Shown: piece after piece, positions 1,443 to 37,300 of the stretch
How the letters are laid out: every line of letters begins with the position of its first letter
Numbering within the stretch: position 1 is the stretch's first letter
Assembly: GCF_001194135.2 (NCBI RefSeq)
Contig: NC_068989.1
Span: 77,130,814 to 77,172,873 of the forward strand
DNA from: Octopus bimaculoides
Taxonomy: Eukaryota
Length of the DNA: 42,060 nt
Reading direction: 5' to 3'
Program-made: the position numbers and the translations under genes
Notes under the pieces: generated by a model
Seen by the model: only the letters and a program-made list of their open reading frames with translations
What the model was told of the DNA's origin: nothing
Database searches by the model: none

Positions 1443-2100
1443 GGCGCAGGAGTGGCTGTGTGGTAATTAGCTTGCTTAAAGGCGGGAAGATGGCTGAATC
1501 GTTAGCACGCCGGGCGAAATGCTTAGCGGTATTTCATCTGCTGTTACGTTCTGAGTTCAAATTCCGCCGAGGTCGACTTTGCCTTTCATTCTTTCGGGGT
1601 CGATAAATTAAGTACCAGTTACGCACTGGGGTCGATGTAATCGACATAATACCTTTGTCTGTCCTTGTTTGTCCCCACTTTCTTTAGCCCCTTGTGGGCA
1701 ATAACGAAATAAGTAGCTTGCTTACCAACCACATGGTTCCGGGTTCAGTCCCACTGCGTGGCACCTTGGGCAAGTGTCTTCTACTATAGCCTCGGGCCAA
1801 CCAAAGCCTTGTGAGTGGATTTGGTAAACGGAAACTGAAAGAAGCCCGTCGTATATATGTATATATATATATATATATATACATGTGTGTATGTGTGTTT
1901 GTGTGTCTGTGTTTGTCCCCCCACCATCACTTAACAACCGATGCTGGTGTGTTTACGTCCCCGTAACTTAGCGGTTCGGCAAAAAGAGACCGATAGAATA
2001 AGTACTAGGCTTACAAAGAATAAGTCCTGGGGTCGATTTGCTCGACTAAAGGCGGTGCTCCAGCATGGCCGCATTCAAATGACTGAAACAAGTAAAGAGG
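1443..2100 (+). mobile_element. tRNA-derived SINE family A (CORE-like head, internal microsatellite), interrupted by a nested SINE
   Basis: A-box-like GGCTGTGTGGTAA and B-box-like GGTTCAGTCCC, followed by ACCTTGGGCAAGT (as in the MIR/CORE domain start). Internal (TA)n(TG)n at about 1850-1910 and 3' end GGCGGTGCTCCAGCATGGCCGC...GAAACAAGTAAAG. Homologous copies at 15581, 33489 and 37141. Confidence 0.85.
1479..1709 (+). mobile_element. tRNA-derived SINE family B (Meta-domain-like), young copy nested in family A
   Basis: Head GGCGGGAAGATGGCTGAATCGTTAG and B-box GAGTTCAAATTCC. Central GTCGACTTTGCCTTTCATTCTTTCGGGGTCGATAAATTAAGTACC resembles the MetaSINE/Sauria central domain (from memory). Flanked by a 15-bp TSD with one mismatch (1464-1478 / 1710-1724). 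Confidence 0.85.
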
Positions 2101-2264
2101 AAAAAAAAATAAAGTCGAATCATAGTTTTCCGTTCCGCTTCTCTGTCTCCCTCAATTTCTCTATTCCTCTCCCCACGCTACATCTCCTTTCCACCTTTCT
2201 ACAATGCCAGGTATATTCAAAGGTGCAATTTTACTGTGATGCAGAGTCACAATATATATACTCT

Positions 2265-3586: not shown

Positions 3587-3799
3587 GAGGGTGTCCACAA
3601 AGTCTGGGTACATTGGGGATTAAGACATACTTTAAGAAATTTTTATTTCTTATATTTAATTGTATATGTTATGATCTTATTTACTCCATGTACCCACATG
3701 GGGATTAACACATACTTTAAGAAATTATTGTTTCTTACATTTAATTGTTTATGTTATGATTTTATATACTCCATGTACCCAGACTTTGTGGACACCCTG
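3587..3799. mobile_element. Tc1/mariner-type MITE with internal tandem duplication
   Basis: Perfect 26-bp TIR AGGGTGTCCACAAAGTCTGGGTACAT (3588-3613) and its reverse complement (3773-3798). TA on the left (3585-3586). The interior is two diverged 85-86-bp units (3610-3695, 3696-3780). Confidence 0.85.
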
Positions 3800-10444: not shown

Positions 10445-10616
10445 TTTTTGGCGCAACGATTTCGTGGTAAATCTATTACTTCAGTCCCACAACCCAAATG
10501 GTACTAAATTTATGAAGTCCGAAATAATGCAAGACAAAATTAGCCTCACCGGAATTTGAAGACAGAACGTAAAGAGTTTGTCCGCCGCGCTTACGATTCT
10601 GCCAGCTCACCGCCCT
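10445..10616 (-). mobile_element. SINE family B copy
   Basis: Reverse complement starts GGCGGTGAGCTGGCAGAATCGTAAG, then TTTACGTTCTGTCTTCAAATTCCGG and a decayed central domain. Confidence 0.7.
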
Positions 10617-15580: not shown

Positions 15581-16147
15581 GACGCAGGAGAGGTTGTATG
15601 GTAAGTAGCAAGTAGCTTGCTTACCAACCACATGGTTTCGGGTTCAGTCCCACTGCGTGGCATCTTGGGCAACTGTCTTCTATTATAGACTCAGGCCGAC
15701 CAAAGCCTTGTGAGTGGATTTGGTAGACGGAAACTGAAAGAAGCCAGTCGTATACATATATATATATATANNNNNNNNNNNNNNNNNNNNNNNNNNNNNN
15801 NNNNNNNNNNNNNNNNNNNNNNNNNNNNNNNNNNNNNNNNNNNNNNNNNNNNNNNNNNNNNNNNNNNNNNNNNNNNNNNNNNNNNNNNNNNNNNNNNNNN
15901 NNNNNNNNNNNNNNNNNNNNNNNNNNNNNNNNNNNNNNNNNNNNNNNTTTGTGTTTGCCCCCCCCACCACATCGCTTGACATCCGATGCTGGTGTGTTTA
16001 CGTCCTCGTGACTTGGCAGTTCGCCAAAAAGAGACTAATAGAATAAGTACTAGGCTTAAAAAGAATATATCCTGAGGTCAATTTGCTCGACTAAAAGATG
16101 GTGATCCAGCATGGCCGCAGTCAAATGACTGCAACATGTAAAAGAAT
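15581..16147 (+). mobile_element. SINE family A copy (gap in internal microsatellite)
   Basis: Near-colinear with 1443-1478 plus 1725-2100, without the nested insert. N-gap 15771-15947 sits in the internal (TA)n. Confidence 0.85.
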
Positions 16148-16437
16148 TAAAAAAAAATAGAACTGATCTTGAAACGAGGAATTTCCATGAGACGTGAACT
16201 TAGTGGTGTGTGTATGCAAGCATAAATTCATGCAAACAGACACACGCGCGCGCAGACACGCACACACACAAACACAGATACATAGAGAGAGAGAGAGAGA
16301 GAAAGTGAGATTAAAGTACAAAATATGGAATATTGATAGTGATTCTCTATTTTTTTTTAATTACTTCAAGTAATTATTAAAAAAAAAACTTTTCAAAATA
16401 TACACAGAAAAGTATTTTCTGTGTATATGAATAAACA

Positions 16438-23882: not shown

Positions 23883-24084
23883 TTTTGGCACATGGTCAAC
23901 AATTTTAGAGTTGAGATAACTTGATTAAATCGGCAGTAGTACTTTACTGGTGCTCATTTTATCGTCCCCAACATGATGAACGGCAAAGTTGAGCCGTGTG
24001 GAATGTGGACTCAGGACGTAAAGACGGGCAAAAGGCCGTTAAGTATTTTCTCAGCCATGATGACGATTCTGCCACCTAGCCGTC
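23883..24084 (-). mobile_element. SINE family B copy
   Basis: Tail TTTTGGCACATGGTCAACAATTTT, central ACTGGTGCTCATTTTATCGTCCCCAACATGATGAACGGCAAAGTTGA and head GACGATTCTGCCACCTAGCCGTC, all reverse complements of family B motifs. Confidence 0.7.
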
Positions 24085-24371
24085 ATATCGCCGGCTTAAT
24101 ATTACAATATAACAATAATTATAATGAAGTTATTCACTGATATCGAAAAAGTGAAAACAAGCAATGTTAAATCTCTGAACGAGGTGTTAACAGTAACTGC
24201 ACGATAAAGTGAAGTATATTTGCCATTTAAATGTGGCTGACCCCTAAGGGTGGATGTTACTGTTGCTTTTAGCCCCAGGAGAACATCTCCTCCAGCTGGC
24301 TTATCGACACATATCTGTGTCCTGTCTATTTTTGCCAAGGGAAGTTATCCTTCCCATCTTGATCTGCGATA

Positions 24372-24416
24372 CGTACGGACCCGAGTTTCGGGGTTATTTC
24401 CCTTCTTCAGCGTACG
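24372..24416 (-). ncRNA. Minimal type I hammerhead ribozyme (second copy, stem II variant)
   Basis: Reverse complement reads CGUACG-CUGAAGA-AGGG-AAAUAA-CCCC-GAAA-CUCGG-GUC-CGUACG, identical to 25283-25327 except C for U at the stem II base. Confidence 0.8.
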
Positions 24417-25282
24417 ATAATCGCCGACCTTTGATGAGAATGACAATCCCTTGGCAATATATAAGTCTTTTTCCAGACAGGACACAGATATGTGTCGATA
24501 AGCCAGCTGGAGGAGATGTTCTCCTGGGGCTAAAGGCAACAGTAACATCCACCCTTAGGGGTCAGCCACATTTAAATGGCAAATATACTTCACTTTATCG
24601 TGCAGTTACTGTTAACACCTCGTTCAGAGATTTAACATTGCTTAATANNNNNNNNNNNNNNNNNNNNNNNNNNNNNNNNNNNNNNNNNNNNNNNNNNNNN
24701 NNNNNNNNNNNNNNNNNNNNNNNNNNNNNNNNNNNNNNNNNNNNNNNNNNNNNNNNNNNNNNNNNNNNNNNNNNNNNNNNNNNNNNNNNNNNNNNNNNNN
24801 NNNNNNNNNNNNNNNNNNNNNNNNNNNNNNNNNNNNNNNNNNNNNNNNNNNNNNNNNNNNNNNNNNNNNNNNNNNNNNNNNNNNNNNNNNNNNNNNNNNN
24901 NNNNNNNNNNNNNNNNNNNNNNNNNNNNNNNNNNNNNNNNNNNNNNNNNNNNNNNNNNNNNNNNNNNNNNNNNNNNNNNNNNNNNNNNNNNNNNNNNNNN
25001 NNNNNNNNNNNNNNNNNNNNNNNNNNNNNNNNNNNNNNNNNNNNNNNNNNNNNNNNNNNNNNNNNNNNNNNNNNNNNNNNNNNNNNNNNNNNNNNNNNNN
25101 NNNNNNNNNNNNNNNNNNNNNNNNNNNNNNNNNNNNNNNNNNNNNNNNNNNNNNNNNNNNNNNNNNNNNNNNNNNNNNNNNNNNNNNNNNTTTCACTTTT
25201 TCGACATCAGTGAATAACTTCACTGGAAAAAGACTTATATATTGCCAAGGGATTGTCATTCTCATCAAAGGTCGGCGATTAT

Positions 25283-25327
25283 CGTACGCTGAAGAAGGGA
25301 AATAACCCTGAAACTCGGGTCCGTACG
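25283..25327 (+). ncRNA. Minimal type I hammerhead ribozyme
   Basis: Stem I CGUACG (25283-25288) pairs with CGUACG (25322-25327). Core CUGAAGA is 25289-25295. Stem II is AGGG-AAAUAA-CCCU (25296-25309), then GAAA (25310-25313), short stem III AC-UCGG-GU, and GUC triplet (25319-25321) with predicted cleavage after 25321. All core nucleotides are in consensus order and spacing. Confidence 0.85.
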
Positions 25328-26077
25328 TATCGCAGATCAAGATGGGAAGGATAACTTCCCTTGGCAAAAATAGACAGGACACAGATATGTGTCGATAAGC
25401 CAGCTGGAGGAGATGTTCTCCTGGGGCTAAAGGCAACAGTAACATCCACCCTTAGGGGTCAGCCACATTTAAATGGCAAATATACTTCACTTTATCGTGC
25501 AGTTACTGTTAACACCTCGTTCAGAGATTTAACATTGCTTAATAATTATAATGATATATTTACATACTATCATTCTGTATATGTATATATGCGTATAGAA
25601 ATATGTCTTCATCTTTTATCTTTTACATTTTCTACGCATTGAACTGGCGGGGCACACTTATATTTATTCAGCTTGGTACCTATACTATTGAAACGTTTAA
25701 GGAAGCGCTGAGTTACGGGTACCTGATCACACCAACTCCGTTGCTCGATACGCACACGCACATAGATATATATTTAGAATATATTATATATTCGTATGTA
25801 AAAATAGTAATAATGATAATATCATCAGCAACGTTATAATAAAGATCTGGAAATAGAGTTAAATCGAATATGTAGCCTAAAAAACAAATATATTTCCTAT
25901 TTAGAGTAGGCACATTAGGTAGGATAAAAAAAAATCAGAAAAGCACCGCACACATCCTTCGTAAAACGCTTTTAATACAGTAGAAATACAAGAGCACCGC
26001 AACCAACCACGGCGCATATCCAAGGCGCACAGAGCTGCGCTCGGTAGTACGGTGTAAGAACGTGATATGAATAAGAC

Positions 26078-26126
<49 letters not shown>

Positions 26127-26145
26127 CAACAACAACAACAACGAC

Positions 26146-26182
<37 letters not shown>

Positions 26183-26200
26183 GTAATAATAATGATAATA
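26078..26200. repeat. (TAA)n with (CAA)n core
   Basis: Read directly; abuts the RLE fragment. Confidence 0.95.
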
Positions 26201-26443
26201 TGTCGGCATTATAAAATCAAAACTGCTGACAAATGGTATAAACACAATCCTGAAGCTGTGACTGAGGGAGAAAATGTATCGATTCTCTGGGACTTCCCCG
26301 TACATACCGACAAGGTTATAAAAGCTAATAAACCGGATATTATTATAAAAGATCAGACAAAGAAGATGTGTTTATTAATTGACATGAGTATTCCCTGCGA
26401 TCATAATATAGCGGCGAAAGAATTTGACAAGATCATTAAATAT
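26201..26443 (+). pseudogene. Restriction-like endonuclease (RLE) domain fragment of an R4/Dong-type non-LTR retrotransposon
   Basis: Open frame CRHYKIKTADKWYKHNPEAVTEGENVSILWDFPVHTDKVIKANKPDIIIKDQTKKMCLLIDMSIPCDHNIAAKEFDKIIKY has the WYxHxP, ILWDF, NxPD, LIDxxxP and KExxKxxKY motifs of the PD-(D/E)xK RLE. Truncated at both ends. Confidence 0.85.
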
Positions 26444-26739
26444 ACAAACTCTCGTATATTGTATGTATGTATGTATGNNNNNNNNNNNNNNNNNNNNNNN
26501 NNNNNNNNNNNNNNNNNNNNNNAGTTTCGGGGATAATGATTCACTTGTTTCTTGTTTTGAGACAACTCTCCTTTCAATTGATCTGAACAGAGACCGAAAT
26601 GGCGAAGAAAAAGTATAGAAGGATAAGTGAAGTAGAAAATTAAGATGAAAAGTGAAAGAAGAAAAGGTGGAGGACGAGGAAGAGGAGAGGAAAATAGTGG
26701 AAGAGCAGTACGAAGATGTGAAAGACGAAAGTAGTTGTT

Positions 26740-32344: not shown

Positions 32345-33488
32345 CACGTCTGTACATTTATATTCATGAAATTGTTTTCAGTATTTCAATTTAGACTTTA
32401 TATTTTTTAGTACAGGTAATGCTATGGCTTAGCAGAGTATTCCTCCGATTAAAAGCATTGCATTGTTTGTGTATTCCGACCAACAAACTTTAATACAAGC
32501 CTCAGAGTTCAAAAAAGATGAATCAATATTTAATGTAGTATTTCTTAATTCCAAGTTTCTAATCATACCAATGTCGATGTTAATGTATGCCTTTGCAAGC
32601 TAATACAAGAATAGAAATGGTGTTTTCCTCAATGATTTATACAACTTTGAAATTACAATTTATATGCTAATATTGCCAAATCGAATAACATAAATGTGTT
32701 TGTAATGTGTAATTACGAAATCATTTTTTATTAGAGAGGTTACTGCAATTAATATAAACTATCATTACAATCACTTTCGTCTAGATTGAATTGACATGTT
32801 TTATTACATCCAACAAATCGTTAAAAAGAAAAAAAAATAAGATAAATTTTCCAAATAAAATCAAAAATTTGCTTAGCTTCTTCAGATAAAGACATCCTTC
32901 ATCACTTTGAAAATTAATATTATTGGTAATAATTTTATAGCTATTCTGAGAGAAATGTTTCCACTACAAAGACTGGAAGTATTAATATAATGTTATGCTG
33001 CTAGGAAAATAAAAACAAATGGAAACAATCAAGAAATTGGCGATCTGAATACTCAGCAGGAAAATAAAACAGAAAACAAGCGCAAATATGATTATTTTGT
33101 GACTTTCAAATCTGATAACGCTGTCAATATTAGTTTTACACAAAATTTATATTCGTTGTTGAAAAGAAGACACTAATATAAAACATATGTTTAAGTAATG
33201 GTTTCTGATGTAGGCACATAACTATTGTTTCCTAGGGGTGTTTTAGACACGCGATTATTTATTTATAAACATCGGGGAAATATTAAACTTAAAACTTCAC
33301 TGCATAATTGTAGCCAGCATGAATCAAAATTCAGCTACTATTATTGTTATTTGCGTGTGTTTGACTATCAGTATTAGTTCTATTAGACAAACAAACACAC
33401 ACATGCACACACACACACACACACGCACACACACACACACCCACACCCACAGACACACACACACACACACACACATATATGTATATAC

Positions 33489-33645
33489 TACAGGCTTCTT
33501 TCAGTTTCCGTCTATCAAATCGACTCACAATTTTTCGACCGATTCCAGGATATAGTAGAAGAGACTTGCCCAAGGTACTACACTGAGACTGAACTCGGAA
33601 CCATGTCTTTGAGAAGCAAGCTTCTTACCACACAGACACTCATAT
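33489..33645 (-). mobile_element. SINE family A 5' half
   Basis: Reverse complement GAGTGTCTGTGTGGTAAGAAGCTTGCTTCTC..ATGGTTCCGAGTTCAGTCTCAGTG..ACCTTGGGCAAGTCTCTTCTACTATA...GACGGAAACTGAAAGAAGCC runs into (TA)n(TG)n. Confidence 0.8.
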
Positions 33646-36128: not shown

Positions 36129-37140
36129 NNNNNNNNNNNNNNNNNNNNNNNNNNNNNNNNNNNNNNNNNNNNNNNNNNNNNNNNNNNNNNNNNNNNNNNN
36201 NNNNNNNNNNNNNNNNNNNNNNNNNNNNNNNNNNNNNNNNNNNNNNNNNNNNNNNNNNNNNNNNNNNNNNNNNNNNNNNNNNNNNNNNNNNNNNNNNNNN
36301 NNNNNNNNNNNNNNNNNNNNNNNNNNNNNNNNNNNNNNNNNNNNNNNNNNNNNNNNNNNNNNNNNNNNNNNNNNNNNNNNNNNNNNNNNNNNNNNNNNNN
36401 NNNNNNNNNNNNNNNNNNNNNNNNNNNNNNNNNNNNNNNNNNNNNNNNNNNNNNNNNNNNNNNNNNNNNNNNNNNNNNNNNNNNNNNNNNNNNNNNNNNN
36501 NNNNNNNNNNNNNNNNNNNNNNNNNNNNNNNNNNNNNNNNNNNNNNNNNNNNNNNNNNNNNNNNNNNNNNNNNNNNNNNNNNNNNNNNNNNNNNNNNNNN
36601 NNNNNNNNNNNNNNNNNNNNNNNNNNNNNNNNNNNNNNNNNNNNNNNNNNNNNNNNNNNNNNNNNNNNNNNNNNNNNNNNNNNNNNNNNNNNNNNNNNNN
36701 NNNNNNNNNNNNNNNNNNNNNNNNNNNNNNNNNNNNNNNNNNNNNNNNNNNNNNNNNNNNNNNNNNNNNNNNNNNNNNNNNNNNNNNNNNNNNNNNNNNN
36801 NNNNNNNNNNNNNNNNNNNNNNNNNNNNNNNNNNNNNNNNNNNNNNNNNNNNNNNNNNNNNNNNNNNNNNNNNNNNNNNNNNNNNNNNNNNNNNNNNNNN
36901 NNNNNNNNNNNNNNNNNNNNNNNNNNNNNNNNNNNNNNNNNNNNNNNNNNNNNNNNNNNNNNNNNNNNNNNNNNNNNNNNNNNNNNNNNNNNNNNNNNNN
37001 NNNNNNNNNNNNNNNNNNNNNNNNNNNNNNNNNNNNNNNNNNNNNNNNNNNNNNNNNNNNNNNNNNNNNNNNNNNNNTATACATATATAAATCATATATA
37101 TATGTATATATATATATATTTATATGTATATATTCGTGAG

Positions 37141-37300
37141 TTTGTATTTATTCCCCCCCCCAGATCGCTTGACAACAGACGTAAGTGGGTTTACGTCCCC
37201 GTAACTTAGCGGTTAGGCAAAATAGCCTGATAGAATAAGTATTAAAGCGGTGCTGCAGCATGGCCGCAATCAAATGATTGAAATAAGTAAAAGAATAAAT
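37141..37300 (+). mobile_element. SINE family A 3' half with internal deletion
   Basis: ATCGCTTGACAAC...TTTACGTCCCCGTAACTTAGCGGTT.GGCAAAA...GATAGAATAAGTA then directly AAAGCGGTGCTGCAGCATGGCCGC. Lacks the GGGGTCGAT segment present at about 2010-2050. Confidence 0.8.

What the first reader, a model, noticed from the sequence alone, without database searches (positions are those of the whole stretch)
25283..25327. Intact minimal hammerhead ribozyme hidden in apparently junk DNA
Seen: CGUACG-CUGAAGA-AGGG(AAAUAA)CCCU-GAAA-C(UCGG)-GUC-CGUACG, a full core with three stems and a canonical GUC site after 25321. Established: minimal type I hammerheads with very short stem III occur in Penelope-like retroelements and in metazoan non-LTR retrozymes. 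Inference: this is a self-cleaving RNA of an octopus-like retroelement family. I do not know of a description of this family but cannot check.
Basis: partly seen in the sequence, partly recalled or inferred. Interest (0 to 1): 0.92.

Follow-up and report, generated by a model that had tools for sequence, protein, structure and literature searches.

The report
Hammerhead ribozyme in a small retroelement
The 45-base motif is a genuine-looking, canonical animal-type (type I) hammerhead self-cleaving RNA that sits in a ~352-base non-coding mobile repeat inserted by Penelope-like retrotransposon machinery: a new example of a well-known kind of element, not a new kind.

Summary
Bases 25283-25327 (+) spell a complete type I hammerhead: 6-bp helix I, CUGAAGA, 4-bp helix II with a 6-nt loop, GAAA, a 2-bp helix III with a UCGG loop, and GUC with cleavage after C25321. 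Rfam 15 gives no hammerhead hit. A covariance model built only from three experimentally validated retrozyme hammerheads (coral, mussel, axolotl) ranks it first in the window (24.5 bits, E=4e-5). A second, inverted copy ranks second (24416-24372, minus strand; 21.7 bits).

It is not the "minimal" Penelope type. It has the canonical metazoan architecture of the Schistosoma and axolotl ribozymes: a UAU/U internal loop after 6 bp of helix I, a distal helix and an A-rich loop 2. Helix III is too weak for a monomer, but two copies can form an 8-bp shared helix III, a double hammerhead.

The motif caps a 39-bp rod in a ~352-nt non-coding unit (circular fold z=-7.5, GC 43%). The locus is a head-to-head insertion flanked by an exact 11-bp target duplication. 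Its two arms end 34 nt apart, which is the "tail" signature of Penelope-like elements.

Best reading: a non-LTR retrozyme-like, PLE-mobilised non-autonomous element. Cleavage, copy number and host organism remain untested. The kind is known; interest is modest.

The parts
25283..25327 (+). Type I hammerhead ribozyme, 45 nt. Helix I 25283-25288/25322-25327; core CUGAAGA 25289-25295; helix II 25296-25299/25306-25309; loop 2 AAAUAA 25300-25305; GAAA 25310-25313; helix III A15.1-U16.1 and C15.2-G16.2 with loop UCGG 25313-25320; C17 = 25321, predicted cleavage between 25321 and 25322.
   Evidence: Sequence. Only locus found by my descriptor. Top hit of the independent CM R1, 24.5 bits, E=4e-5. 0 compact hits in 158 Mb of shuffles.
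25275..25333 (+). Extended helix I. Internal loop UAU (25280-25282) opposite U (25328), then distal helix GCGAU (25275-25279) paired with AUCGC (25329-25333). This is the 'loop 1' architecture of canonical type I hammerheads.
   Evidence: Fold. Same layout in Schistosoma N79 (UAC/U), axolotl Ax353 (UUC/U) and Ax330 (UGC/U), from sequences.
25242..25367 (+). 39-bp interrupted rod (6+5+4+8+5+11 bp): 25242-25288 pairs with 25322-25367. The hammerhead core, helix II and helix III sit at its tip.
   Evidence: Circular MFE helix list.
25191..25540 (+). Plus-strand copy of the repeat unit: A (32-nt 'tail', 25191-25222) plus B (318 nt, 25223-25540). Its 5' limit is hidden by the N gap. Its 3' end abuts the right TSD.
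   Evidence: Self-BLAST, sequence, circular fold -116.8 kcal/mol versus shuffles -77.9 +/- 5.2, z=-7.5, GC 42.6%. No Pfam domain. No protein homologues of any frame.
24125..24476 (-). Inverted arm: exactly one 352-nt unit in the order B - GT - A. It is 99.4% identical to the plus copy over B and has three transition differences in all (at plus-copy positions 25309, 25432, 25205). Its 3' end (the end of A) abuts the left TSD.
24372..24416 (-). Second hammerhead copy. It is identical except U11.1->C, which makes an A10.1/C11.1 mismatch at the base of helix II. Predicted cleavage after C17 at 24378.
   Evidence: CM R1 second-best hit, 21.7 bits, E=3e-4. Difference mapped.
24475..24647 (+). Direct 5'-truncated partial copy, equal to 25372-25544 at 100% identity. 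It is joined head-to-head to the inverted arm with a 2-nt overlap and ends in 'AATA' at the edge of the gap.
24114..24124 (+). Left target-site duplication, AATAATTATAA.
   Evidence: Exact 11/11 match to 25541-25551, flush with both element ends. A random-pair 11-mer match occurs at frequency 7.8e-5 in this window.
25541..25551 (+). Right target-site duplication, AATAATTATAA.
24648..25190 (.). 543-N assembly gap inside the composite insertion. It hides the 5' end of the plus copy and any tandem junction.

Best explanation
The motif is the self-cleaving hammerhead ribozyme of a small (~352 nt), non-coding, highly structured retroelement of the metazoan non-LTR retrozyme type. That type is a non-autonomous element copied and inserted by the reverse transcriptase/GIY-YIG endonuclease of Penelope-like elements (PLEs).

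Proposed working:
1. Multimeric or read-through transcripts carry the motif once per unit.
2. A single motif is held inactive, because its helix III has only 2 bp and the core CUGA can pair with loop 3 UCGG.
3. Two motifs pair their ACUCGGGU segments into a shared 8-bp helix III. This double hammerhead aligns both cores, and each strand is cut after C17 (25321), leaving 2',3'-cyclic phosphate and 5'-OH ends.
4. Unit-length RNA can then be circularised by the host RtcB-type ligase.
5. The RNA is reverse-transcribed at a staggered chromosomal break.

At this locus both DNA ends primed cDNA synthesis. Priming used two start sites 34 nt apart on the RNA: the end of B and the end of the A 'tail'. 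The result is two arms, head to head, flanked by an 11-bp target duplication.

Shown here: the sequence motif, its architecture, the fold predictions, two copies, the TSD, the tail offset and the absence of coding capacity.

Inferred: cleavage, dimer dependence, circularisation, PLE dependence and current activity.
For: Motif and significance:
-.
- CM R1, built only from coral, mussel and axolotl retrozyme hammerheads that were shown to cleave (sequences; model), puts the two copies first and second in the window at 24.5 and 21.7 bits. The next hit scores 12.4 bits.
- Helix-less look-alikes score at most 12.9 bits.

Canonical architecture:
- 6-bp helix I, a U-N-Y/U internal loop, a distal helix, a 4-bp helix II and an A-rich 6-nt loop 2, matching Schistosoma N79 and the axolotl motifs.
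- It also matches the published definition of canonical metazoan type I hammerheads: helix I 6 bp, helix II 4 bp, helix III 1-2 bp with a 2-4 nt palindromic loop.

Dimer model:
- Monomer MFE -13.7 kcal/mol with the core sequestered, against -7.4 for the hammerhead fold.
- The cofold MFE (-55.1) is the double hammerhead with the 8-bp helix III. The helix III duplex alone is -8.9 kcal/mol.

Retrozyme-like unit:
- About 352 nt, GC 42.6%, circular fold z=-7.5, a 39-bp rod closing helix I.
- No Pfam domain and no protein homologue.
- Circularly permuted copies: A-B in one arm, B-GT-A in the other.

PLE insertion signature:
- An exact 11-bp TSD flush with both ends.
- An inverted 5'-truncated copy adjacent to a direct copy, plus a 30-40 bp tail, as described.
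- One search reports the tail as the interval between two RT start sites, a signature unique to PLEs, and reports that both DNA strands are cleaved and extended.
- The literature proposes PLEs as the mobilisers of non-LTR retrozymes.
Against: - No Rfam hammerhead hit at any threshold tried.
- The 10.1-11.1 pair is A-U, not the usual G-C. The inverted copy has an A/C mismatch there, so activity may be reduced or lost.
- Only two copies are available, at 99.4% identity. There is therefore no within-family conservation or covariation evidence.
- No relatives turned up in the metagenome or viral collections. These collections are not expected to hold animal DNA.
- No uninterrupted tandem dimer is visible. 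The 543-N gap sits where it would be.
- The direct partial copy is followed by AATA, not by the GT-A junction that a simple tandem would give.
- Part of the arrangement may be an assembly artefact. PLE-type inverted or tandem insertions are known to break short-read assemblies.
- No PLE RT/EN was found in the neighbourhood scanned (23.7-27.3 kb).
- Frangieh et al. found that hammerhead cleavage was not needed for PLE insertion in vitro.
Confidence: 0.7

Rival explanations
1. The two copies are 5'-truncated remnants of the pLTR / 3' end of an autonomous Penelope-like element. The hammerhead would then be the PLE's own pLTR ribozyme, not that of a separate non-autonomous retrozyme family.
For: All the insertion hallmarks are PLE hallmarks: heavy 5' truncation, an inverted adjacent copy, the tail and a TSD. 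PLE hammerheads lie in pLTRs close to the RT start sites. Here the motif starts 61 nt downstream of the end of the tail. The gap could hide more sequence.
Against: - PLE hammerheads are described as minimal variants that lack helix III and the loop-loop architecture, with a longer helix II and a shorter helix I. This one has the canonical form assigned to retrozymes.
- The inverted arm reads B-GT-A, closing the unit at 352 nt with no ORF between.
- No RT or GIY-YIG signal was found in the neighbourhood scanned, 23.7-27.3 kb.
Confidence: 0.2
2. The hammerhead-like string is a chance motif at the tip of a hairpin in a foldback or MITE-like DNA element. It has no catalytic role.
For: 24.5 bits would occur by chance a few times in a gigabase genome (extrapolated). 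Rfam models do not recognise it. The locus is an inverted repeat flanked by a direct duplication, as for DNA transposons.
Against: - 0 compact hits in 158 Mb of shuffled sequence.
- Beyond the core it also has the U-N-Y/U internal loop, the distal helix, the A-rich 6-nt loop 2 and a self-complementary helix III segment. All sit in the positions seen in validated ribozymes.
- The inverted arms are offset by 34 nt at their outer ends. That is the PLE tail pattern, not a set of terminal inverted repeats.
Confidence: 0.05
3. The local arrangement is wholly or partly an assembly artefact of a repeat. This applies to the palindromic junction at 24475/24476, the 100%-identical partial copy before the gap, and the exactly unit-length inverted arm. 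The ribozyme-bearing unit is real, but its organisation here is not.
For: - The window has 14 N gaps.
- The partial copy 24475-24647 is 100% identical to 25372-25544 and ends in the first 4 nt of the TSD, right at a gap.
- PLE structures are reported to cause problems in short-read assemblies.
- A collapsed tandem would give exactly one unit.
Against: The inverted arm, its tail and the left TSD lie in one uninterrupted contig. The three substitutions between the arms show that they are distinct sequences. The exact TSD on both sides is not something mis-assembly is expected to produce.
Confidence: 0.3
4. The hammerhead is a domesticated host element, for example an intronic or UTR ribozyme acting on an mRNA, like the amniote HH9/HH10 motifs.
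For: Type I hammerheads have been co-opted in amniote introns.
Against: Two 99.4%-identical copies with a TSD indicate recent transposition, not an old conserved single-copy site. No exon or protein domain was detected nearby.
Confidence: 0.03

Closest known systems
Metazoan non-LTR retrozymes (Cervera & de la Pena 2020, PMC7229834), e.g. mussel Mg353, axolotl Ax353/Ax330, coral Amil224
   Same: - A canonical type I hammerhead in a non-coding unit of 150-450 nt, here about 352 nt.
- Low GC (42.6%) and a strongly structured predicted circle.
- A short helix III with a self-complementary loop, so a dimer is probably required as in axolotl and newt.
- A TSD longer than 4 bp.
- Circularly permuted copies.

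   Different: - No sequence similarity outside the motif.
- No uninterrupted tandem array is seen here: one unit per arm, in head-to-head orientation.
- 10.1-11.1 is A-U.
- circRNA expression is unknown.
Schistosoma mansoni Sm-alpha / Sm1 hammerhead (N79 derivative; crystallised type I hammerhead)
   Same: Near-identical layout: distal helix, a 3-nt/1-nt internal loop (UAC/U versus UAU/U), 6-bp helix I, CUGANGA, 4-bp helix II, 6-nt A-rich loop 2 (CAAAUA versus AAAUAA), and GAAAC...GUC.
   Different: The helix sequences are unrelated. N79 has an engineered long helix III, whereas this motif has 2 bp. Sm-alpha is described as a SINE-like element.
Penelope-like elements and their min-HHRs (Cervera & de la Pena 2014; Craig et al. 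2021; Frangieh et al. 2024)
   Same: Insertion anatomy: 5' truncation, an adjacent inverted copy, a 30-40 nt tail corresponding to two RT start sites, a TSD, and a hammerhead close to the unit boundary.
   Different: No RT/EN ORF. The hammerhead is of the canonical type, not the minimal PLE type, which has no helix III, a 7-8 bp helix II and a 4-5 bp helix I.
Newt satellite 2 and ASBVd double hammerheads
   Same: Helix III is unstable in the monomer, and the active form is predicted to be a dimer with an extended shared helix III.
   Different: Different hosts and contexts: a large satellite array in newts, an infectious RNA in ASBVd.

Membership tests
Hammerhead ribozyme, type I (canonical metazoan form) | Conserved core CUGANGA / GAAAY / RUH, with A15.1-U16.1 and H17 | tested here: met
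   CUGAAGA, GAAAC and GUC are all in register. The criterion is quoted.
Hammerhead ribozyme, type I (canonical metazoan form) | Three helices in type I topology (helix I open): helix I about 6 bp, helix II about 4 bp, helix III 1-2 bp with a 2-4 nt palindromic loop | tested here: met
   6 bp, 4 bp, and 2 bp with a 4-nt loop. ACUCGGGU is self-complementary with two G-U pairs.
Hammerhead ribozyme, type I (canonical metazoan form) | Loop 1 / loop 2 elements for the tertiary contact: an internal loop after 6 bp of helix I and an A-rich loop 2 | tested here: inconclusive
   The positions and composition match Schistosoma and axolotl (UAU/U; AAAUAA). The contacts themselves cannot be tested by sequence.
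Hammerhead ribozyme, type I (canonical metazoan form) | Mg2+-dependent self-cleavage 3' of position 17 | not testable with these tools
   Needs in vitro transcription. Fold predictions favour an inactive monomer and an active dimer.
Hammerhead ribozyme, type I (canonical metazoan form) | Scores as a hammerhead with a covariance model trained on validated members | tested here: met
   R1 (3 validated sequences): 24.5 bits, E=4e-5, best in the window. Controls score at most 12.9 bits.
Rfam RF00163 Hammerhead_1 (and its clan) | Score at or above the family gathering threshold | tested here: not met
   No hammerhead family was reported at gathering threshold or at E<=10 on 330 or 81 bases.
Non-LTR retrozyme | Canonical type I hammerhead inside a short (150-450 bp), non-coding, low-GC unit | tested here: met
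   352 nt, GC 42.6%, no Pfam domain and no homologue. Definition.
Non-LTR retrozyme | Tandem arrangement (at least a dimer), so that two ribozymes bracket a unit | tested here: inconclusive
   Both A-B and B-GT-A junctions exist, implying a tandem or circular template. No intact dimer is visible, and the 543-N gap intervenes.
Non-LTR retrozyme | Expressed as unit-length linear and circular RNA | not testable with these tools
   No transcriptome is available. The predicted circle is very stable (z=-7.5).
Penelope-like element (autonomous) | ORF encoding a TERT-like RT, with a GIY-YIG endonuclease in EN+ clades | tested here: not met
   No Pfam hit in the stop-free frames (at least 40 aa) of 23.7-27.3 kb. 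Nothing coding-like stands out among the six-frame open segments of the whole window (by eye; not scanned against Pfam).
Penelope-like element (insertion mechanism) | An optional 30-40 bp tail (two RT start sites), an inverted 5'-truncated copy adjacent to a direct copy, and a TSD | tested here: met
   The arms end 34 nt apart (GT plus the 32-nt A). They lie head to head with a 2-nt overlap. There is an exact 11-bp TSD. Definitions.
PLE-type minimal hammerhead (min-HHR) | No helix III or loop 3, helix II 7-8 bp, helix I 4-5 bp, no loop-loop elements | tested here: not met
   The motif has helix III with a loop, a 4-bp helix II, a 6-bp helix I and an internal loop.

The most novel reading that the evidence does not exclude
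This locus may be a genomic footprint showing directly how a canonical-hammerhead retrozyme is mobilised. PLE machinery would have cut both strands 11 bp apart and primed cDNA on both ends, from two internal start sites 34 nt apart on the retrozyme RNA.

The inverted arm is exactly one 352-nt turn: it starts at the base that follows its own end. That fits a one-round copy of a circular RNA template.

If so, it would be mechanistic, rather than merely phylogenetic, evidence for the retrozyme-PLE link in a mollusc-like genome. It would also be the first described retrozyme family of that lineage.
Probability: 0.3. Interest if true: 0.5.

Novelty: new member of a known kind. Interest (0 to 1): 0.3.

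Why it matters
Type I hammerheads in animal repeats, retrozymes and PLE hammerheads are established. Another family adds little by itself.

What could matter is the insertion anatomy. A 2020 review states that metazoan retrozymes carry no motif revealing which autonomous element moves them. The PLE link so far rests on co-occurrence and on pLTR similarity in Xenopus.

This locus combines a canonical-hammerhead unit with a TSD, twin inverted arms and the PLE-specific tail. If it is confirmed genome-wide, that would be direct structural evidence for PLE-mediated mobilisation.

The result also shows that the Rfam hammerhead models miss this motif. Annotation pipelines may therefore undercount such elements.

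Tried and rejected
- **Rfam 15.** I ran the gathering threshold on the whole window, and E<=10 on 25191-25520 and on 25265-25345. No hammerhead was reported. The only hits were weak chance matches to snoZ161_228 and algC.
- **Public DNA collections.** I scanned for CTGANGA-N14-GAAACTCGGGTC. Viral contigs gave 0 hits. Metagenome contigs gave 12 hits, none with a helix I of more than 3 bp or a helix II of more than 3 bp, so all are chance. I used them as negative controls. The prokaryote genome collection was not scanned because it is irrelevant here.
- **Other copies via mis-called proteins.** A 398-aa chimera of all open frames of the unit found no homologue.
- **Organism identification.** The LINE-like fragment at 26231-26449 has one homologue, on a jellyfish-metagenome contig, which is uninformative. 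There are no tRNAs and no Rfam genes. The organism stays undetermined. From memory, the sequence left of the insertion resembles an octopus SINE. That is a lead only.
- **Pfam.** A scan of the open frames in 23.7-27.3 kb found nothing. A first attempt with raw DNA references failed because of stop codons.
- **Alignments.** MAFFT alignments that included N79 or Ax330 (A1, A2) mis-aligned helix III or the GAAA columns, so I did not use them for the model. The model uses three sequences (A3).
- **Similarity to known retrozymes.** BLAST of the unit against the coral, mussel and axolotl retrozymes found no similarity beyond 9-11-mers.
- **The repeat finder.** The run on the whole window was swamped by N runs. 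A local BLAST replaced it.
- **A longer element.** I considered the idea that the AT-rich 3' flanks are part of the element (23/29 similarity in inverted orientation). I rejected it in favour of the exact 11-bp direct TSD.

Full report
**1. The observation**

Bases 25283-25327 (+) read CGTACG CTGAAGA AGGG AAATAA CCCT GAAA C TCGG G TC CGTACG. In hammerhead numbering every core position is canonical:
- C3-A9 is CUGAAGA (25289-25295).
- G12 A13 A14 is 25310-25312.
- A15.1 (25313) pairs with U16.1 (25320), and C15.2 pairs with G16.2.
- C17 is 25321, so the scissile bond lies between 25321 and 25322.

Helix I is six Watson-Crick pairs (25283-25288 with 25322-25327). Helix II is four pairs, with A-U at 10.1-11.1, closed by a 6-nt loop.

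A descriptor I wrote finds this as the only type I hammerhead locus on either strand of the window.

**2. Is it more than chance?**

- A loose descriptor hits 3.6% of 1000 dinucleotide-shuffled windows. Hits of the observed helix quality occur in 0.2%.
- A compact descriptor (helix I >=6 bp, helix II >=4 bp, short helix III) gave no hit in 4356 shuffled windows, 158 Mb scanned on both strands. The real window gives one hit, which also has a 5-bp distal helix.
- Rfam 15 does not report any hammerhead family at gathering threshold, nor at E<=10 on 330 or 81 bases.

Because of the Rfam result I built an independent covariance model (R1). It uses only three hammerheads shown experimentally to self-cleave in retrozymes: coral Amil224, mussel Mg353 and axolotl Ax353. 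Their sequences come from the supplement of PMC7229834, and the model was built.

With filters off, R1 ranks 25281-25329 (+) first in the window at 24.5 bits, E=4e-5. It ranks 24418-24370 (-) second at 21.7 bits, E=3e-4. The next hit scores 12.4 bits.

As a control I used twelve metagenome sequences that share all 18 specified core and loop-3 bases but lack helices. They score at most 12.9 bits.

A score of 24.5 bits alone would still be expected a few times by chance in a gigabase genome. The argument depends on what follows.

**3. Architecture beyond the 45 nt**

Helix I continues outward: after its 6 bp comes an internal loop, UAU (25280-25282) opposite U (25328). A distal helix follows, GCGAU/AUCGC, and then further pairing.

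The same layout is visible in validated type I hammerheads whose sequences I retrieved:

| Ribozyme | Internal loop | Loop 2 |
|---|---|---|
| Schistosoma N79 | UAC/U | CAAAUA |
| Axolotl Ax353 | UUC/U | CACUA |
| Axolotl Ax330 | UGC/U | CAAAAA |
| This motif | UAU/U | AAAUAA |

All have a 6-bp helix I before the loop.

Cervera and de la Pena define canonical metazoan hammerheads as helix I 6 bp, helix II 4 bp, interacting loops, and helix III of 1-2 bp capped by a 2-4 nt palindromic loop. This motif fits that definition.

**4. Monomer versus dimer**

- Folded alone, the 45-mer prefers a structure in which core CUGA pairs with loop 3 UCGG (-13.7 kcal/mol). The hammerhead fold scores -7.4 kcal/mol.
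- The segment ACUCGGGU is self-complementary: 8 bp with two G-U pairs, -8.9 kcal/mol.
- The minimum-energy cofold of two copies is exactly the double hammerhead with a shared helix III and free cores (-55.1 kcal/mol).

This is the behaviour reported for newt, ASBVd and axolotl motifs, which cleave poorly as monomers and well as dimers. I therefore expect dimer-dependent cleavage. That is inference.

**5. The element**

A local BLAST shows that the motif lies in a repeat. Three pieces are present:
- The plus copy is A (32 nt, 25191-25222) plus B (318 nt, 25223-25540). It begins at the edge of a 543-N gap.
- An inverted arm on the minus strand (24476 down to 24125) reads B, then GT, then A. It is 99.4% identical over B.
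- A direct partial copy (24475-24647 = 25372-25544, 100% identity) is fused head-to-head to the inverted arm.

The inverted arm differs from the plus copy by three transitions in all. One turns U11.1 into C in its hammerhead.

Because A-B and B-GT-A both occur, the template was tandem or circular, with a unit of about 352 nt.

That unit has these properties:
- GC is 42.6%, against 33% for the window.
- The circular fold is -116.8 kcal/mol, against -77.9 +/- 5.2 for shuffles (z=-7.5).
- A 39-bp interrupted rod (25242-25288 with 25322-25367) closes helix I.
- It has no Pfam domain, and no frame has a protein homologue.
- It has no similarity to the coral, mussel or axolotl retrozymes outside the motif.

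**6. The insertion**

The composite block 24125-25540 is flanked, flush with both ends, by an exact 11-nt direct repeat, AATAATTATAA (24114-24124 and 25541-25551). Random 11-mer pairs in this window match at a frequency of 7.8e-5.

Each arm has its 3' end at a TSD and its 5' end toward the middle. The two 3' ends differ by 34 nt: the plus arm stops at the end of B, and the minus arm continues through GT plus A.

Published descriptions of PLE insertions list exactly these features:
- strong 5' truncation;
- an inverted 5'-truncated copy adjacent to the direct copy;
- an optional 30-40 bp tail at one end;
- resulting trouble in short-read assemblies.

Frangieh et al. showed in vitro that a PLE protein cleaves and extends both DNA strands. 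It starts reverse transcription at two adjacent internal sites whose interval is the tail, a signature they call unique to PLEs.

I therefore infer that PLE machinery made this insertion. No RT/EN coding sequence was found in the neighbourhood scanned against Pfam (23.7-27.3 kb), and the six-frame open segments of the whole window show nothing coding-like by eye. The element is therefore non-autonomous here.

**7. What it most likely is**

The locus carries a canonical type I hammerhead in a roughly 350-nt non-coding, low-GC, highly structured unit. Its copies are circularly permuted and it has a TSD longer than 4 bp. That matches the non-LTR retrozymes of animals.

PLEs are the proposed mobilisers of such elements. 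The main rival is that these are simply 5'-truncated ends of an autonomous PLE. The hammerhead type and the closure of the unit at 352 nt argue against that, but only a genome-wide census can settle it.

Parts of the local arrangement may be assembly artefacts. The suspect features are the 100%-identical partial copy that ends in the first four bases of the TSD right at the gap, and the exactly unit-length inverted arm.

Alternatively, two insertions could have hit the same target. These possibilities do not affect the reality of the motif. They do limit what can be said about tandem structure.

**8. Weak points**

- Cleavage is untested.
- The 10.1-11.1 pair is A-U rather than the usual G-C, and one copy has a mismatch there.
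- Only two near-identical copies are available, so there is no conservation or covariation evidence.
- The organism could not be identified. "Octopus-like" remains a guess.

**9. Comparison with the literature, and novelty**

In the held literature I found no description of retrozymes or hammerhead-bearing repeats in cephalopods. The one exception is a count of 235 Rfam Hammerhead_1 loci in the giant squid genome.

Octopus genomes are reported to carry recently active Penelope families. A helper element would therefore be available if the host is an octopus.

The kind of element is well known, so this is at most a new family. The moderately interesting part is the PLE tail, twin-arm and TSD signature on a canonical-hammerhead unit. 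If general, it would be direct structural evidence for the proposed retrozyme-PLE dependence.

**10. Verdict**

- Observation: confirmed.
- Interpretation: partly supported.
- Novelty: a new member of a known kind.
- Interest: 0.3.

Noticed in passing
window 24125-24476 (-): The inverted arm is exactly one 352-nt unit: it starts at the base equivalent to 25223 and ends at the base equivalent to 25222. This could be a one-turn cDNA of a circular RNA, a tandem array collapsed by the assembler, or a coincidence of about 1%.
   Followed up: partly
window 24644-24647 and gap 24648-25190: The direct partial copy is followed by AATA, the first four bases of the TSD, immediately before the 543-N gap. 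The contig left of the gap may therefore already hold a complete insertion (24125-24643). In that case 25191-25540 would be a second insertion at the same target or a redundant assembly.
   Followed up: partly
window 25378-25393 (+): A perfect small hairpin, GACACA-gaua-UGUGUC, lies 6 nt from position 25372, where the direct partial arm begins. It may be a pause or template-switch site for the reverse transcriptase.
   Followed up: no
window 26231-26449 (+): An intact 73-codon frame (KWYKHNPEAV...ILWDFPVHTDK...KIIKYTN). From memory it resembles the C-terminal tail of invertebrate LINE-type RT proteins. It has no Pfam hit and a single homologue, on a jellyfish-metagenome contig. It is separated from the hammerhead unit by an (ATA)n/(AAC)n microsatellite at 26081-26200.
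   Followed up: partly
window 1710-2111, 15610-16159, 33427-33627 (-), 37095-37291: Four copies (76-93% identity) of a SINE-like repeat of about 400 bp. A further 77-nt inverted pair lies at 1544-1620 and 10496-10572.
   Followed up: no
window 23900-24110: The sequence immediately left of the insertion (...ggggacgataaaatgagcaccagtaaagtac... on the minus strand) resembles, from memory, the abundant octopus SINE. It is the only hint to the host organism and was not tested.
   Followed up: no
window 25202-25274 (-): A weak C/D-box snoRNA-like match (snoZ161_228; 16 bits against a gathering score of 45; E=3.2) on the antisense strand of the unit, with UGAUGA and CUGA boxes and a terminal stem. It is probably chance.
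   Followed up: no
window, whole: There are 14 N gaps (5790 N in total). GC is 33%. Microsatellites are dense, often right at gap edges: (CA)n, (TA)n, (ATT)n, (TAGA)n. An 85-bp tandem duplication lies at 3614-3781. No tRNA or Rfam gene is present.
   Followed up: no
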